Assembly (NCBI GenBank): GCA_053919585.1
Contig: CM132818.1
DNA from: Euprymna scolopes
Taxonomy: Eukaryota
DNA: 64,000 nucleotides
Direction: 5' to 3' (one strand)
Shown: in pieces, positions 9,788 to 57,411 of the stretch
Position numbering within the stretch: position 1 is the first letter of the stretch
Layout of the letters: the number at the start of each line of letters is the position of its first letter
Notes under the pieces: model-generated
The model's database searches: none
Seen by the model: the letters and a program-made list of their open reading frames with translations, nothing else
What the model was told of the DNA's origin: nothing
Made by a program: the position numbers and the translations under genes

Positions 9788-9920
9788 TCACAGATTGCAG
9801 GAGTTGAGGGGCCATTCAAAAGGTGCATATTTGATCGCAACATTGCCTATTTTGTCCAAAGTAATAAGTAGAAGACGGGCACGTTCTTGCTTCTCCTTAG
9901 ACAAATAATGTAATGTTGAT
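9788..9920 (-). CDS. DUF547-family protein, terminal coding exon
   Basis: Acceptor tctcttccAG. Phase 2 matches the previous exon. Translates (K)STLHYLSKEKQERARLLLITLDKIGNVAIKYAPFEWPLNSCNL*, with a C-terminal Y..F/YxW.LN motif typical of DUF547 proteins. TGA at 9790-9788. Confidence 0.88.
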
Positions 9921-10941: not shown

Positions 10942-11120
10942 TTGATAACATCGATGTCTTGTTTACCAAAATCTTTGAGATACCATTTGAAGAATCCTGG
11001 TAACCAGATCTCATTCACCTCCGTGTACATGCAGATTTCTTTCTCACAAAATGTTTTTGCCGCTTCATCCAAGGACTTGTCCAAGTTGGAACCATGGTAG
11101 ACATTTAAAGCAGGACTTGA
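10942..11120 (-). CDS. DUF547-family protein, internal exon
   Basis: ttgttttcAG acceptor, GTAAGT donor, 179 nt, phase 0 to 2. SSPALNVYHGSNLDKSLDEAAKTFCEKEICMYTEVNEIWLPGFFKWYLKDFGKQDIDVI contains the F.WY..DFG motif. Confidence 0.92.
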
Positions 11121-14344: not shown

Positions 14345-14463
14345 CTTACAACCCCACACGATTGCAAAGTGGATTCTTGGATCAAGTTTTGTTATCGTAA
14401 ACTGTAAACGAGGATCTTGGGATTCAAAGTGAGGCTTGATTGATGCTGGTTCTGGACGATTTC
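14345..14463 (-). CDS. DUF547-family protein, internal exon
   Basis: ctctcctaaaAG acceptor, GTAATT donor, 119 nt, phase 1 to 0. (G)NRPEPASIKPHFESQDPRLQFTITKLDPRIHFAIVWGCK contains the DPRIHFA motif. Confidence 0.92.
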
Positions 14464-16341: not shown

Positions 16342-18189
16342 TTGTATTTAATCGTTACCTGTTCTTGTACTAGCTAAACTAATGGATGCACAGTTTCTAG
16401 TTTGGAGTTGCTCTAATAATCTTTGCAAGTGACTCCCATTGAGAGCTTCTGTTAAGTGCCTCGGATGTAGGGACATTAATTTAGGTGTTAGTTCACCATA
16501 TCTTTTGCTCAGCGTCATGATCATTTGGCGTAGGAATATGTATCCTGTTGAGATGCTCTCCGGTTACATACGAACTACATACTTATATAAGGCCGTCAAC
16601 ACTACCTAGAAGCAAGGTTTTTATTCAAGTCTGCTATCTATTCGGCGCTTTGTCTGACAGGATAGTTTTTCCATGTGGATTATTGTCATCTGCCTTTCCC
16701 AGAAAAGGCACCCTAAAACCTCACACGTGGTGGCAGCGGCAAACATTCAAAAGAATTCAGCCTTCGACGATAATACGTTCTACAAACGAAAAGTCGTACT
16801 CATTGATTAAGGATACGCAAAAGTTTTCTCAAAAATATTAAGTTAAAAATACGAGGATTACAAGTCGCATATATTGCCTGTCGGAAAGTGGAACTTGTAC
16901 CCTGAAAGAATTACGACAAATACATCATAACTTAAGATTTCGAGTTGCTACAAAAACGATGAGACGATTTAAAAAGGGTAATAAATGAACATCGTACTCC
17001 TACAAGTCGTTTCTAACTACGAGTGGAGACAGCTTAAACGCGAGGAGTTAACATGCATCTCCAAGAAGAAAAGAAAAAAAGTATTAAATATATTATATTC
17101 ACTTATGCAAACCAAGCAGTAAAAAGAAAAGAAACACCTTAAAGCCACACACGCATACTGTTACTCGGCTTCCATGGACAGACTGATAACTTCATCTTTG
17201 AAGAACGCAAGTTATGTATATGGCGATAGCTTGCCTGAATGCTTACACTCCAGGAGTATTTTATCCTTTTTACCATGGTTTATGAACCTGGTTTTAGTAG
17301 GTTGCAACTTGCTAGCAGAAGTGAGAGCGCAATGATTAAACAGGCAGTGAGAAGCGGGTTGCTTCTCATGTTCGAGAAGCATATTCCCAAGATCCAGTCG
17401 TGTTAGGAACTTGTCTGCACCAGTGTCAGTTCTTCTGGAAAAGATATTTTACACTTCATTAAAGATTTCCACTTGTTTGCTGATTTCTCAAGCTTGCCGA
17501 GATATTAAAACTCGCATTTTTCTGAGAAGCATTTAAAAGTTGAAATAAACTTGAGTTCAGCATCGAAAATTACTTGGCAGAGAATGCCATCTTTCATAAA
17601 CTTGCAAATAATGGTTGTGTCATCTATTTTTTCCTCCAAAATTTGATCAGTTATCATTCAGCAATCTGACTCTCAAACAAGTCAATACCAATCTTGTCGC
17701 GGTTGATCAGGTATTAAAATTTGTTTCATGAACTCGTTTTGCAAATGGAAATATGCATCTGATGCATATTTCTGATGACATGCTTGGCCAGAAAACATTC
17801 TCTTGCATGCTGTAGACATTTCTCTATGCCCATGTGTGAAGAGTAAATCGTGCACCCAATGTAACTCCAGACTGAATGGAAGGAGTACAGTCAGCCTTAA
17901 AAGTTCCTTCTGGATGTACATTTCATCATGGATGTAGTACAGTGGAAAGGTCTATCTTCGCAGATGGTCAACCCTCCTGTAGTACTGTTTTCCCAGAGTT
18001 AATTGCATACCTTATTTTAGTCTTGCTTTCCAGATTTGCATCAGTCTTTCATCTTGGATAGGAAACTAATATTAAGCTGGAATTTGGTTTGATGATTTTT
18101 TTTAGGTTGTCATATATGACCATGATTTTTTTTCATTGTAGTACACAACATTGCTAGTATATTTCCCTAGTATATTTCCAAGTCTGTAA

Positions 18190-19115
18190 TACGAGGTGCC
18201 TTAAATAAGTTTCCAGACTTTTTCCGTATGGGCATTTTTGATAGTACACACATGAAACTAGTCCCCTTCAAAGTAATCTCCTCTGGTCCAGCTGCAATGC
18301 ACCTGTACTGTTCCAGAAACTTCTGGAAGTCAGCCTCTTTCATCTTGTTTCATAACGACAGCCTCTACGGTTTTCCTTGAGCTTAGGGGATAAAAGTCAC
18401 AGGTTTGGACTATAGGGATGGTGAGGAACTGTCTTGATGCCCATCTTGGTCAAATAGTTTGTAACAAAGATGAAGTTGTGGACTGATGCATTGTCCTGGT
18501 GGAAATGCCACTGACCAGATTTGAAGAATGCTGGCCTCTTCGACGGAATCTTTTCCTGAACTCCATTAAAACCTCAACATAGTATTCTTTGTTGACTGTT
18601 CAGTGGGAACCCAGTGCATGTAGCTCATGTCCGTGCCGTCAAAAGTTTCTGAGTGGATTTGTTCTGTCTTGCCTTGGGTTTGGGAAAGCCAGCATGCTTC
18701 CACTGGGAAATGTCTCTTGATCAAAGCAGTGGATCCAGTTTTCATTGCAGGTCAGAGCATCAAGAACTGGGATCTGAATTGATCAGCTCTACCATATCCA
18801 TGCTGTCAGGACATCTTTCTGATCAACTCTGGGACAAACTTCGCACATATCTTCTGAATCTTCAGTTTCCACACTTATTGTCTATAGACAAACGACGGTC
18901 CTTATCCAGGAGATTGTTTATTCGACCAATCAACTCTGGTGTTCCGACTTCCTTACTCCTCCCCTAGACTCCCTTGAATCTTATGCCCCTCAAAAACTGA
19001 TGCTTGAAAGATAGCCCAAAAGCAGTCTGAAGCATTCCATATGCTTCTGTAGCATTTTTTTTCCAAGTTTAGAGCAGAATTTTATTGTATATCATTCTTC
19101 TACATCCAGATTGTA
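18190..19115 (-). mobile_element. Decayed Tc1/Mariner (mariner-type) transposon
   Basis: Minus-strand remnants IKFCSKLGK.NATEAYGMLQTA (N-terminal HTH) and GQWHFHQDNASVHN (second catalytic D region). TA-flanked TIR-like end tacgaggtgccttaaataagtttccagact. Many frameshifts. Confidence 0.8.
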
Positions 19116-21787: not shown

Positions 21788-21940
21788 CCCTGAGAATTCC
21801 ATGTTCAATATCTTGCAAAGTAAAGTTCTGTTTACCAATTTGATAAGCCGAAGTGTGCCAGAATTGTTGCAGATCACGTATCGAATGTGGAAGTTTTGGT
21901 TGGCCGACAATGGCATGGATCGTCAATATGTTAAACAAAT
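21788..21940 (-). CDS. DUF547-family protein, internal exon (follows the U12 intron)
   Basis: 153 nt, phase 1 to 1, GTAAGT donor. (N)LFNILTIHAIVGQPKLPHSIRDLQQFWHTSAYQIGKQNFTLQDIEHGILR has the N.YN-like, Y.IG and L.DIEHGILR DUF547 motifs. It is absent from the ORF track on this strand. Confidence 0.93.
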
Positions 21941-23685
21941 CTTGTCAGTTTTGTCAAGGAAACTTTTCCCAGGTTTAAAAATGACACATCCTAAAACAAT
22001 CTTAGGAACCATTAATACAGAAATCTTAAAAAATAAAAGGAAAATTTTACAAGATGGAGCAATTTTACCTTTGTTAAAATTGTCCATAAGAGTCGTTATA
22101 CATTAATTTCAATGTACTCCAGATTTGTTTACATATTTCCAAAAGTTATCTTAATATCCTAATGAAAAATTAGGATTGGACTTTCATTTTAAAGTCATCC
22201 AAACAACTCAGTTTGGAAAAGTTACATTTCTTTGCACCCACTTTTTGTGCTTATGATTTTCTATTAAATTACATTTTATGCATATATTTAGTGAATATAA
22301 ATAGTGTATACTTTTAAGGCATATTTCTTATAAAATAGAAATGGTTATGAATAGCAAGCTCAATGAAGAACTATTATTGCCTCCAGAACCCCTACTCTCC
22401 AATTGACATTGGCCTGCTTCACCTTTCCATAGCCACACAATGGCTCTTTAGTGTCCGTTAGTTCAAGATTCTTGACAGACACTAAAATGGATAGCATCTA
22501 AATTATCTACCAAATTTTTAAAGTAAAAATTTATACATAAAATCCAACTTGTCTGGTTTTATGACTGAACAGACATTTGGAAGGCTCATCTACATGCTAA
22601 TATATTTGAGACTATTCATGTTCCTTTGTGGCCAGCAGGACTAATGAAGATCAAGCAGGACTAATGAAGATCAAGCAGGACTAATGAAGATCAAGCAGGA
22701 CTAATGAAGATCAAGCAGGACTAATGAAGATCAAGCAGGACTAATGAAGATCAAGCAGGAGTCAATATCAGGATACTTTATTCTCTGGTCATCTTTCAGT
22801 AGAAAGCAAGGAAGCAGGTGCCAGGGTCGTAACTGCAAATCTATGAAGTGAGAATAACGTTGCTTTGGCACATGTGCAACTACCATTCTTGTGCATGTTC
22901 TAAGCTAAAATATTTCCATTTTGTGATCGCTGAGCAGCCTTGTTGCTCTGTATCAAGAGAGGAGTAATCTTGCACATTTAAAGAGTTACAATCAACGAGA
23001 ACTTTGTACTTTGGGGAGATCAGGCAAGCTTGAAGCCAGATCTTCATAGGTTCTGCGCAAAAGGTATATTCAGATAAAAAAAAAAAAAAAACCCTGAAAG
23101 GTCTGATGTTAGATGACAAATACGATCAATAAAGTTCATCCATGCATAGTCTTGCTGTTTCATATACGTTATACCGGCAGCTACATAGTCAATCCAGGTT
23201 TCATTACCTCATTCAGAATGCAGACAGTAATTGTTCAATCTAAGGCTCTCACGGGAAGTGGAGTTTCATGATGTGACAAAAATAACAGCATCAGATTGAA
23301 CATGCATTTTTCTTAGATGCAACCTAATTCGGTCAAAATCTTTCAATTCTTTTTTACCATCCTCCTAGTTTAGAATTCTGAAATTCTATTTGTCCTTTTG
23401 TTAGATTCCAAGGAGAAAAATATGGAGGTTCAAAATTATCAATAAATTATTGCAGAAAAATAGTATTTTCATGAAGACAAAACAGAAAAGTAAAAATGTG
23501 CATAAATAGTTATTACTTTCTAGTTATTTGTTACGTAACAAAACCATAATACAATTTGTTCAATATCATTGTTTACAATAATTTAAACTTTCAATTACTG
23601 GAATAGGATTCAGATTTAAAAACATTCAGTTTATTTGAAACTCATTACACAAAGTTAAATTGTTAATGAAAATCTTCAAGGATAC
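21941..23685 (-). other. U12-type (minor spliceosome) GT-AG intron, 1745 bp
   Basis: 5' splice site GTATCCTT (23685-23678). Branch site TTCCTTGAC (21961-21953) ends 12 nt before the 3' splice junction. No polypyrimidine tract. Splicing restores the AFFIN motif in frame. Confidence 0.9.
22634..22760. repeat. Minisatellite, 20-bp unit x6.3, perfect
   Basis: (AGCAGGACTAATGAAGATCA)n inside the U12 intron. Confidence 0.97.
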
Positions 23686-23843
23686 TAATAAAAAACGCTT
23701 TTTGTTGATCTGTTGATAATTCACAAATGTTGATGTAGGGTAATTGTGACACTTCCTGTTTTAATTTGGTGAATTCACCACTTGTCTTGAGTTTTGTGTA
23801 GTCAACATTCATACCATCTTTGGAGACAAATTTGGTTATTAAA
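23686..23843 (-). CDS. DUF547-family protein, internal exon
   Basis: ttattttccAG acceptor, GTATCCTT donor, 158 nt, phase 2 to 1. LITKFVSKDGMNVDYTKLKTSGEFTKLKQEVSQLPYINICELSTDQQKAFFI has the DG..VDY and AFFI(N) motifs. Confidence 0.92.
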
Positions 23844-44527: not shown

Positions 44528-44658
44528 NNNNNNNNNNNNNNNNNNNNNNNNNNNNNNNNNNNNNNNNNNNNNNNNNNNNNNNNNNNNNNNNNNNNNNNNN
44601 NNNNNNNNNNNNNNNNNNNNNNNNNNNNNNNNNNNNNNNNNNNNNNNNNNNNNNNNNN
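44528..44658. other. Assembly gap (131 N)
   Basis: Run of N next to an internally repetitive element. Confidence 0.99.
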
Positions 44659-54593: not shown

Positions 54594-54840
54594 TTGTATG
54601 GCACAATCATGTTGACACACCAATTTGCTAGATCACCAAAGTTAAGCAACATTGAGCCTGGCCAGTACCAGATGGGTGACCATTTGGGAAGGCTAGGCGC
54701 TGTATGTACCTTCTGGGAAGGTTGGACGTAGGGCCAGCACCCTCACCCTGTAATAAAAACTCTTCGCTACAAAAACATCTACAACAATTGTAGATGGCCT
54801 ATGCCCCTCCAGGGGCTTAAGGGCTATAGATGGATGGATG
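54594..54840 (+). mobile_element. 5S rRNA-derived SINE (SINE3-like) with RTE-like body and tail
   Basis: 54594-54706 aligns by eye to animal 5S rRNA (gatcacc.aagttaagcaac.t.gagcc.gg..agtac..gatgggtgacc...tgggaa...g.gctgta). It is followed by RTE-like 5' and 3' motifs and a (GATG)n tail. Confidence 0.8.
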
Positions 54841-56656: not shown

Positions 56657-57065
56657 CTAGCCTGGGTGCCCGGAGGTGTGTTGAGGAAAAAAAAAAAAAA
56701 AAAAAAAAAGTGGTGGTAGGCAGGCAGGCTCAAAACAGTGACGCGAAGGCAGAAAAGAAAGTGAAAGAAAATCTGACATCTTAGCCAATGTCTCCATGGT
56801 GTAACCAGAAGCCAAAAGTGTTGAAATTTACAAAAGTTAATCTAACAGTGACGATAACTTGCTAAAATGTCGGCGGGGGGGGGGGGGTTCAACCAATGGC
56901 CGAGTTTAGGGTGAAGGAATTAACGTTTTTGGCCAATTTTTCAATATTTGTCATCAGAGACATGTCGAGCTTCAAAATATTACTGATCATATCGGAATCC
57001 GTTGCCTCTGTTGAAAGTTTTTGCGAGACATACATTTAAACAGACAGGTGAGATTATATTATAGA
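56657..57065 (-). mobile_element. Helitron-like family A copy
   Basis: Minus strand TCTATAATATAATCTCACCTGTCTG ... ccgggcacccaggCTAG|T. Confidence 0.7.
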
Positions 57066-57411
57066 CTACCAGCAGTGGAAGATTTTGTTTTAAACAAAAA
57101 TTAAAGGAATCGTTTTTGGCATTCTTGATTCTGATACCCCAAAAAGTTCCGGTTCCAGATTTCAATTAATTATCCCAACACTGAATACCGGTTTCATAGG
57201 TCATTGTTCTGCAAACACTTGACCCTTCTAATCAATTTCAATTATTTAAGATCCTCACATTTTCCTTAAAATAAAGAATTGAATACAAGTTAAACTTGTT
57301 TCATTTATGCATTTCTGAAATTATAATTCCAGTGAGGGGCTTTTCATCAAGATTTGTTTTTTCATTGCAGTAGGAAGAGGTTCTTACTGTTAAGGAGGAA
57401 CCAGTTTAGCA

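What the first reader, a model, noticed from the sequence alone, without database searches (positions are those of the whole stretch)
21941..23685. U12 minor-spliceosome intron splitting the conserved AFFI-N motif of a DUF547 gene
Seen: the donor is GTATCCTT, a TTCCTTGAC branch site lies just upstream of an AG with no pyrimidine tract, and joining the exons gives an in-frame KAFFI-N-LFN. Known: these are the U11/U12 recognition signals, and such introns are rare and can be rate-limiting for expression. Inference: this uncharacterised gene depends on the minor spliceosome, and standard gene finders may mis-model this junction.
Basis: partly seen in the sequence, partly recalled or inferred. Interest (0 to 1): 0.7.

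Follow-up and report, generated by a model that had tools for sequence, protein, structure and literature searches.

The report
Ancient U12 intron in DUF547 gene
A 1,745-base intron in an uncharacterised cephalopod DUF547 gene carries textbook minor-spliceosome (U12-type) signals, and the same intron sits at the same codon in other molluscs, a brachiopod, an annelid, amphioxus and a fish, so it is real and old but an ordinary example of a well-known intron class.

Summary
On the minus strand, exon A ends at 23686 (…KAFFI + A). The intron, 23685-21941, starts GTATCCTTG. TCCTTGAC (21960-21953) puts the branch A 13 nt before the terminal AG, with only 3 pyrimidines in the 11 nt between. Exon B starts at 21940 (AT + LFNILTIHA…), so the intron is phase 1 inside the conserved Asn codon of the DUF547 motif.

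The junction is backed by transcript-sized contigs. One ORF (P0145) is identical to four of the window's exons and reads KAFFINLFNILTIHA. A relative's cDNA contig aligns to the window with a break exactly at 23686|21940.

The intron at this codon and phase is U12-type in Octopus, Patella, Crassostrea, Lingula, Owenia and Branchiostoma, and U12-like in Amia. A charophyte alga has no intron there. The gene's other four introns are ordinary U2-type.

Minor-spliceosome dependence is inferred from sequence and conservation, not shown. The worry about gene finders is only weakly borne out: the seven annotated orthologues whose genomic loci I checked all model the junction correctly.

This is a new member of a well-known kind, and interest is low. 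A sibling note from this scan concerns the same gene's CxxxxCP motif.

The parts
23686..23843 (-). Exon A of the DUF547 gene (158 nt; t + LITKFVSKDG...DQQKAFFI + a). It is preceded by a U2-type acceptor, ttttattttccag.
   Evidence: 100% identical to transcript ORF P0145; blastn to cDNA contig L004 ends exactly at 23686
21941..23685 (-). U12-type GT-AG intron, 1,745 nt, phase 1, inside the Asn codon of the KAFFI-N-LFN motif.
   Evidence: orthologous U12-type introns
23677..23685 (-). 5' splice site GTATCCTTG (U11/U6atac recognition sequence). The exon bases before it are TTA, so -1 is A, not G.
   Evidence: -1 G is described as the hallmark of major and minor-like introns in PMC11347168
21953..21962 (-). 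Branch-point sequence TTTCCTTGAC (U12 snRNA pairing site). The predicted branch adenosine is at 21954, 13 nt from the intron end.
   Evidence: the same GTTTCCTTGAC variant appears in published U12-type SMYD2 introns (PMC7367187 Table 1)
21941..21942 (-). 3' splice site AG, preceded by CAAAACTGACA (no pyrimidine tract).
21788..21940 (-). Exon B (153 nt; at + LFNILTIHAIVGQ...GILR + g), the DUF547 core. It is followed by a U2 donor, GTAAGT.
   Evidence: Pfam PF04784, E 1.9e-10, profile positions 16-65
14345..14463 (-). Exon C (NRPEPAS...DPRIHFAIVWGCK), flanked by U2-type sites (22-nt pyrimidine run before the AG; donor GTAATT).
10942..11120 (-). Exon D (SSPALNVYHG...DIDVI), with U2-type sites.
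9788..9920 (-). Last coding exon E (STLHYLSKEK...PLNSCNL, then stop), with a U2-type acceptor that has a 23-nt pyrimidine run.

Best explanation
This is a genuine U12-type (minor-spliceosome) GT-AG intron in a small (~290 aa) DUF547-only gene of a cephalopod mollusc. The likely mechanism follows established knowledge of minor splicing. The U11/U12 di-snRNP recognises the 5' splice site (A|GTATCCTTG) and the branch sequence (TTTCCTTGAC) together. The adenosine at 21954 attacks the 5' splice site after U6atac replaces U11. The AG 13 nt downstream is chosen by its short, fixed distance from the branch point rather than by a pyrimidine tract and U2AF. Splicing joins 23686 to 21940 and rebuilds the Asn codon (A|AT) in the most conserved motif of the domain. 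The intron was already U12-type in the last common ancestor of protostomes and chordates and has stayed so in this lineage. Shown here: the motifs, the exact junction in transcript-derived sequence, and conservation of position, phase and type. Inferred: that the minor spliceosome removes it in this animal.
For: Motifs and geometry. Exon B is DUF547 profile 16-65, so the split Asn falls at profile position 15 with no indel. Junction: P0145, a 292-aa ORF on a 1.2-kb Logan contig, is identical to exons A, C, D and E, differs at 2 of 52 residues in exon B, and reads KAFFINLFNILTIHA. cDNA contig L004 aligns as 1612-1773 to 23847-23686 and 1774-1930 to 21940-21784, contiguous in the query. Orthologous introns at the same codon and phase, each given as donor / branch site / distance from branch A to intron end: Octopus GTATCCTTT / TTCTTTAAC / 11 nt; Patella GTATCCTTT / ACCATAAC / 11; Crassostrea GTATCCTTT / TTCCTTAAC / 9; Lingula GTATCCTTA / TTCTTTAAC / 11; Owenia GTATCCTTT / TTCTTAAC / 10; Branchiostoma GTATCCTTC / TCCTTAAC / 17; Amia GTATCTTTT / GCCTTAAC / 12. 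48 genomic ORF fragments from other species read ...D[ILV]YN (intron AG + AT). 15 of 42 carry the tripeptides that encode TCCTTRAY within 8 residues of the acceptor, against 2.7% background, p = 1.4e-13. The gene's other four introns have GTAAGT or GTAATT donors and pyrimidine-rich acceptors. Chance for a fixed GT/AG pair is about 8e-7. Phase 1 is the commonest phase for minor introns and molluscs are relatively rich in them (PMC10639083). The same motif variants are classed U12-type by intronIC (PMC7367187 Table 1).
Against: P0145 and L004 are assumed to be RNA-derived because they are intron-less and transcript-sized; the library type was not seen. No formal intronIC or PWM score was computed. 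No minor snRNA gene lies in the window, so the presence of the machinery in this genome rests on the literature for molluscs and on an untested sibling note about an AT-AC intron. In two unidentified compact-genome eukaryotes the intron at this position is short and U2-like or ambiguous (L001, L002), so the type is not fixed everywhere. Exon 1 of the gene was not located in the window.
Confidence: 0.92

Rival explanations
1. A real intron at these coordinates that is removed by the major (U2) spliceosome, with U12-like motifs that are relics or coincidence (a 'hybrid' or 'minor-like' intron).
For: It has GT-AG termini. Minor-to-major conversion is known (PMC10639083). At the same position L002 has a plainly U2-type intron and L001 an ambiguous one.
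Against: The donor has T, C, C at +4 to +6, where U1 and U6 pairing needs A/G, G, T. Position -1 is A, not G (PMC11347168). There is no pyrimidine tract between the branch site and the AG. Both signals are kept in at least seven other species from five phyla while the rest of each intron is unrelated. The chance of both motifs at a fixed pair is about 8e-7.
Confidence: 0.05
2. The gene model is wrong here: other splice sites are used, or the two exons belong to different transcripts.
For: No reads from this genome were available. Some annotations of orthologues differ around this junction (P0173, P0175, P0254).
Against: P0145 and L004 cross the junction exactly. In-frame stops on both sides leave no other GT/AG pair that preserves the motif. 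Seven annotated orthologues use the homologous sites.
Confidence: 0.01
3. The locus in this window is a silent or decaying copy, and the transcripts come from another copy.
For: Exon 1 of P0145 was not found in the window. Only a 7-residue match, out of frame with a nearby ATG, lies at about 57,072. Exon B differs from P0145 at two residues.
Against: Five exons are intact with consistent phases and good splice sites, and four are 100% identical to the transcript ORF. In octopus the first intron is 33 kb, so exon 1 may simply lie outside the window or in the N run, which was not touched.
Confidence: 0.02

Closest known systems
U12-type (minor-class) GT-AG spliceosomal introns, as catalogued by intronIC/IAOD and MIDB
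   Same: 5' splice site /GTATCCTT, branch sequence TCCTTRAC 13 nt from the 3' end, no pyrimidine tract, phase 1, flanked by ordinary U2 introns in the same gene, and conserved in orthologues across phyla. The motif variants are the same as in published U12-type introns of SMYD2, RNF121 and UFD1 (PMC7367187).
   Different: Nothing mechanistic. The host gene is a DUF547-only protein that went unmentioned with U12 in the searchable literature (0 papers), and no mammalian orthologue appeared among the 120 listed relatives. If mammals do lack it, it would be missing from human-centred lists of minor-intron genes, but that absence was not specifically tested.
Orthologous intron in Octopus sinensis LOC115217066 and Lingula anatina LOC106154375
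   Same: Same codon, same phase, same intron type, and in octopus a similar length (3,345 nt). Both genomes were included in the pan-eukaryotic intronIC survey (PMC10639083), so these introns were presumably scored there in bulk.
   Different: Different species. The window's branch site has G rather than A at the R position, and a perfect TCC where octopus and Lingula have TCT.
Minor-to-major intron conversion (Larue and Roy 2023; Moyer et al. 2020)
   Same: At this same position L002 carries a short U2-type intron (GTATTTTC donor, ACTAA branch, pyrimidine tract). L001 carries a 70-nt intron with a GTATCCTC donor but a degenerate branch site.
   Different: The window's intron shows no sign of conversion. 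The taxa of L001 and L002 are unknown, so the direction of change is not established.

Membership tests
U12-type (minor spliceosome) intron | 5' splice site matching /[GA]TATCCTT, unlike the U2 consensus GTRAGT | tested here: met
   GTATCCTTG at 23685-23677
U12-type (minor spliceosome) intron | Branch-point sequence TCCTTRAY | tested here: met
   TTTCCTTGAC at 21962-21953
U12-type (minor spliceosome) intron | Branch adenosine a short, constrained distance (roughly 8-21 nt) from the 3' splice site | tested here: met
   A21954 is 13 nt from G21941. In the orthologues the distance is 9-17 nt.
U12-type (minor spliceosome) intron | No pyrimidine tract between the branch site and the 3' splice site | tested here: met
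   CAAAACTGACA has 3 pyrimidines in 11. By contrast, two of the gene's U2 introns have 22-23-nt pyrimidine runs.
U12-type (minor spliceosome) intron | The sites are really used: mRNA joins the flanking exons exactly | tested here: met
   Transcript-sized contigs P0145 (near-identical) and L004 (about 82% nucleotide identity) cross 23686|21940. No reads from this genome itself were available.
U12-type (minor spliceosome) intron | Orthologous introns are of the same type | tested here: met
   Octopus, Patella, Crassostrea, Lingula, Owenia and Branchiostoma; Amia is U12-like
U12-type (minor spliceosome) intron | Formal classifier score (intronIC SVM or U12 PWMs) in the U12 range | not tested
   The program and its matrices were not available. 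I compared only with published classified examples.
U12-type (minor spliceosome) intron | The genome encodes U11, U12, U4atac and U6atac | not tested
Molluscs are reported as rich in minor introns.
U12-type (minor spliceosome) intron | Splicing depends on minor-spliceosome components | not testable with these tools
   Needs a knock-down or an in vitro splicing assay.
DUF547 (Pfam PF04784) protein | Match to the Pfam profile above the gathering score | tested here: met
   Exon B alone scores 41.2 bits against a cut-off of 27, E 1.9e-10. Exons C and D give weaker matches to later profile positions.

The most novel reading that the evidence does not exclude
This is an ancient bilaterian minor intron in a gene family with no mammalian member among the 120 listed relatives, so it may lie outside human-centred lists of minor-intron genes. 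Because it splits the most conserved motif of the domain at a fixed codon, and some compact-genome lineages have a short U2-type or ambiguous intron at the same place, it offers a clean natural series for studying how U12 introns convert to U2-type.
Probability: 0.45. Interest if true: 0.3.

Novelty: new member of a known kind. Interest (0 to 1): 0.2.

Why it matters
It matters mostly for annotation. The junction should be modelled as 23686|21940 and the gene flagged as a minor-intron gene in cephalopods. Conservation from molluscs to amphioxus and a ray-finned fish dates the intron to at least the protostome-deuterostome ancestor. That adds one well-anchored marker for studies of minor-intron retention, loss and conversion in lophotrochozoans, where few individual cases have been described. 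It does not change the understanding of splicing and says nothing about what DUF547 does.

Tried and rejected
So there are no junction reads, no intron-retention estimate and no lariat evidence.
- The word-index protein search with exon B alone found nothing. Its length rule hides full-length relatives from exon-sized queries.
- Literature: DUF547 together with U12 gave 0 papers.
- An Rfam scan of the window found no minor snRNA, only a 5S-like element.
- Pfam scans of ten other stop-free stretches around the gene found nothing.
- Motif counts alone are weak evidence: GTATCCTT occurs 5 times against 1.7 expected, and TCCTTRAC 5 against 4.4. Loose donor/branch pairs occur elsewhere in the window. 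I therefore did not rest the case on counts.
- The Acropora look-up returned a transcript contig, so the cnidarian state is unknown.
- The search for exon 1 gave only a 7-residue match, out of frame with the nearby ATG, and I did not pursue it.
- tblastn with the relative's RabGAP-TBC ORF found nothing in the window.
- The N run at 44528-44658 was left alone.

Full report
OBSERVATION. The gene lies on the minus strand. Exon A ends ...AAA GCG TTT TTT ATT A at 23686, and the next bases are GTATCCTTG (23685-23677). Near the other end the sequence is ...GTTTCCTTGACAAAACTGACAAG|ATTTGTTTAAC.... TCCTTGAC occupies 21960-21953, its second-to-last base A21954 is 13 nt from the last intron base G21941, and exon B begins at 21940. 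Translated in their own frames the exons give ...STDQQKAFFI (+a) and (at+) LFNILTIHAIVGQ.... The intron is therefore phase 1 and the split codon is A|AT, Asn. The reading frame closes six codons after the donor (TAA) and opens just after a TGA at 21947-21945, so no other GT/AG pair could keep the motif.

IS IT MORE THAN CHANCE? Motif counts alone are unimpressive: GTATCCTT occurs 5 times against 1.7 expected, and TCCTTRAC 5 against 4.4. Loose donor/branch pairs also occur elsewhere in the window. The argument is positional. Only 5 of 6,330 GT sites carry GTATCCTT, and only 7 of 7,120 AG sites have TCCTTRAY with its A 8-21 nt upstream. That gives about 8e-7 for one GT/AG pair fixed in advance, and here the pair is fixed independently by protein homology and by cDNA.

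THE GENE. Exon B alone matches Pfam DUF547 (PF04784) at E 1.9e-10, over profile positions 16-65. Exons further downstream match later parts of the profile. With the relative's cDNA and a near-identical ORF as guides, the coding exons are A 23843-23686, B 21940-21788, C 14463-14345, D 11120-10942 and E 9920-9788, with consistent phases. The other four splice-site pairs are ordinary U2-type: donors GTAAGT, GTAATT and GTAAGT, and acceptors such as ttttattttccag and a 22-23-nt pyrimidine run before the AG. Only the A/B intron has T-C-C at +4 to +6, an A at -1, and a purine-rich stretch (CAAAACTGACA) between the branch motif and the AG. A G at -1 is described as the hallmark of major and minor-like introns (PMC11347168).

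The one representative search, with exon B, gave 143 hits. P0145, found with the octopus protein as query, is a 292-aa uninterrupted ORF on a 1.2-kb Logan contig. It is identical to the window's exons A, C, D and E and differs at 2 of 52 residues in exon B, and it reads ...DQQKAFFINLFNILTIHAIV.... A second intron-less contig from a relative (L004, protein P0001) aligns to the window at about 82% nucleotide identity. Query bases 1612-1773 align to 23847-23686, and 1774-1930 to 21940-21784, so the break falls exactly at the predicted junction. I take these contigs to be RNA-derived because the genomic gene spans more than 14 kb with at least four introns. The library type itself was not visible.

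COMPARATIVE EVIDENCE. Genomic loci of annotated orthologues were fetched and the intron at the Asn codon was read.

- Octopus sinensis: A|GTATCCTTT ... TTCTTTAAC, 11 nt to the AG.
- Patella vulgata: A|GTATCCTTT ... ACCATAAC, 11 nt.
- Crassostrea virginica: A|GTATCCTTT ... TTCCTTAAC, 9 nt.
- Lingula anatina: A|GTATCCTTA ... TTCTTTAAC, 11 nt.
- Owenia fusiformis: A|GTATCCTTT ... TTCTTAAC, 10 nt.
- Branchiostoma lanceolatum: A|GTATCCTTC ... TCCTTAAC, 17 nt.
- Amia ocellicauda: A|GTATCTTTT ... GCCTTAAC, 12 nt.

All are phase 1 in the same codon, and lengths run from 198 to 5,826 nt. These motif variants equal those of introns that intronIC classes as U12-type (SMYD2, RNF121, UFD1; PMC7367187 Table 1). 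Klebsormidium nitens has no intron at this codon, and the Acropora look-up returned a transcript, so it is uninformative.

In addition, 48 cluster representatives are genomic ORFs that read from the intron into exon B as ...D[ILV]YN, that is intron ...AG plus exon AT or AC. Of the 42 with enough upstream sequence, 15 carry S-L-T/I or [FLIV]-L-N/D, the translations of TCCTTRAY, within 8 residues of the acceptor. The background is 2.7%, giving p = 1.4e-13. This is a lower bound, because one frame turns the motif into a stop codon.

Two unidentified compact-genome eukaryotes have short introns at the same place. L002 is plainly U2-type: GTATTTTC donor, ACTAA branch, pyrimidine tract. L001 has a GTATCCTC donor with a degenerate branch site. 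Both are compatible with minor-to-major conversion, a known process (PMC10639083).

MECHANISM. From established knowledge of minor splicing, the U11/U12 di-snRNP binds the 5' splice site and the branch sequence. U6atac replaces U11, A21954 forms the lariat, and the nearby AG is selected by its distance from the branch. Conservation of both signals over more than half a billion years, in introns that are otherwise unrelated in sequence, argues that they are used. Phase 1 is the commonest phase of minor introns and molluscs are relatively rich in them (PMC10639083). Dependence on the minor spliceosome in this animal remains an inference.

'Gene finders may mis-model this junction': the seven annotated orthologues checked at the genomic level model it correctly. 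A few other annotations look disturbed there. Tegillarca P0173 skips the last ~37 residues of exon A but keeps the Asn, and some partial models start at exon B. No protein in the list was marked as this window's own, so this genome's annotation could not be judged. 'Rate-limiting for expression' was not testable.

WHAT ORGANISM. The closest proteins are P0145 (near-identical), the relative's P0001 (79% over the aligned exons) and the cuttlefish Acanthosepion pharaonis (76%), then Octopus (59%). An earlier follow-up in this scan calls the genome a mollusc. A decapodiform cephalopod is my inference.

NOVELTY. U12-type introns are textbook. Octopus sinensis and Lingula anatina were in the pan-eukaryotic intronIC survey, so the orthologous introns have presumably been scored in bulk. 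No paper in the library mentions DUF547 together with U12. I class this as a new member of a known kind and score it as low interest.

Noticed in passing
window 22634-22760: Inside the U12 intron there are 6.3 perfect tandem copies of a 20-bp unit (AGCAGGACTAATGAAGATCA on the plus strand), 100% identical, so the array is recent.
   Followed up: no
window 14345-14356 and 11112-11120 (minus); proteins P0145, P0001, P0161, P0004: The DUF547 motif C-G-A-x-S-C-P, kept in gastropods, bivalves, Lingula, Owenia, Amia, Acropora and Klebsormidium, reads W-G/S-C-K-S/T-S-P in all four cephalopod-like sequences. The change is therefore lineage-wide, not an error in this window. This bears on sibling note s1-275230.
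   Followed up: partly
window about 57052-57122 (minus): An exact 7-residue match (LVVYNII) to the N-terminus of transcript ORF P0145, and a nearby ATG opening MPKTI (compare MAKSV), lie about 33 kb upstream of exon A. That is the same distance as exon 1 in octopus, but the two pieces are in different frames and the rest does not match. Exon 1 of the gene was not otherwise found in the window.
   Followed up: partly
L003 1-838, L008 1-78, L012 1-39, L004 481-1398: A RabGAP-TBC gene lies head-to-head with the DUF547 gene in octopus, Lingula, Owenia and on the relative's contig, so the gene pair is deeply conserved. tblastn did not find it in the window.
   Followed up: partly
L001 2279-2350; L002 564-632: Two unidentified eukaryotes with compact genes have 66-70-nt introns at the same codon and phase. 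One is U2-type. The other has a U12-like donor, GTATCCTC, and the same degenerate ACCATAAC branch motif as Patella.
   Followed up: partly
window 16806-16816 (minus): GTATCCTTAAC, a U12 donor motif overlapping a branch motif, sits inside the long B/C intron. It is not at any exon edge and I take it for chance.
   Followed up: no
window 18400-18600 (minus), inside the B/C intron: Stop-free stretches (…FHQDNASVHNFIFVTNYLTKMGIKTVPHHPYSPNL) look from memory like a mariner-type transposase remnant, but a Pfam scan of one 58-aa piece gave no hit at E 0.01.
   Followed up: partly
proteins P0002, P0003, P0005: Some database proteins contain the exon-B segment repeated 2 to 13 times (for example P0003, 776 aa, with 13 matched stretches), as if an exon-B-like piece had been amplified in tandem in some genome.
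   Followed up: no
window 54594-54708 (plus): There is an Rfam 5S rRNA match (49 bits) in a region that a sibling note describes as a 5S-headed SINE.
   Followed up: no
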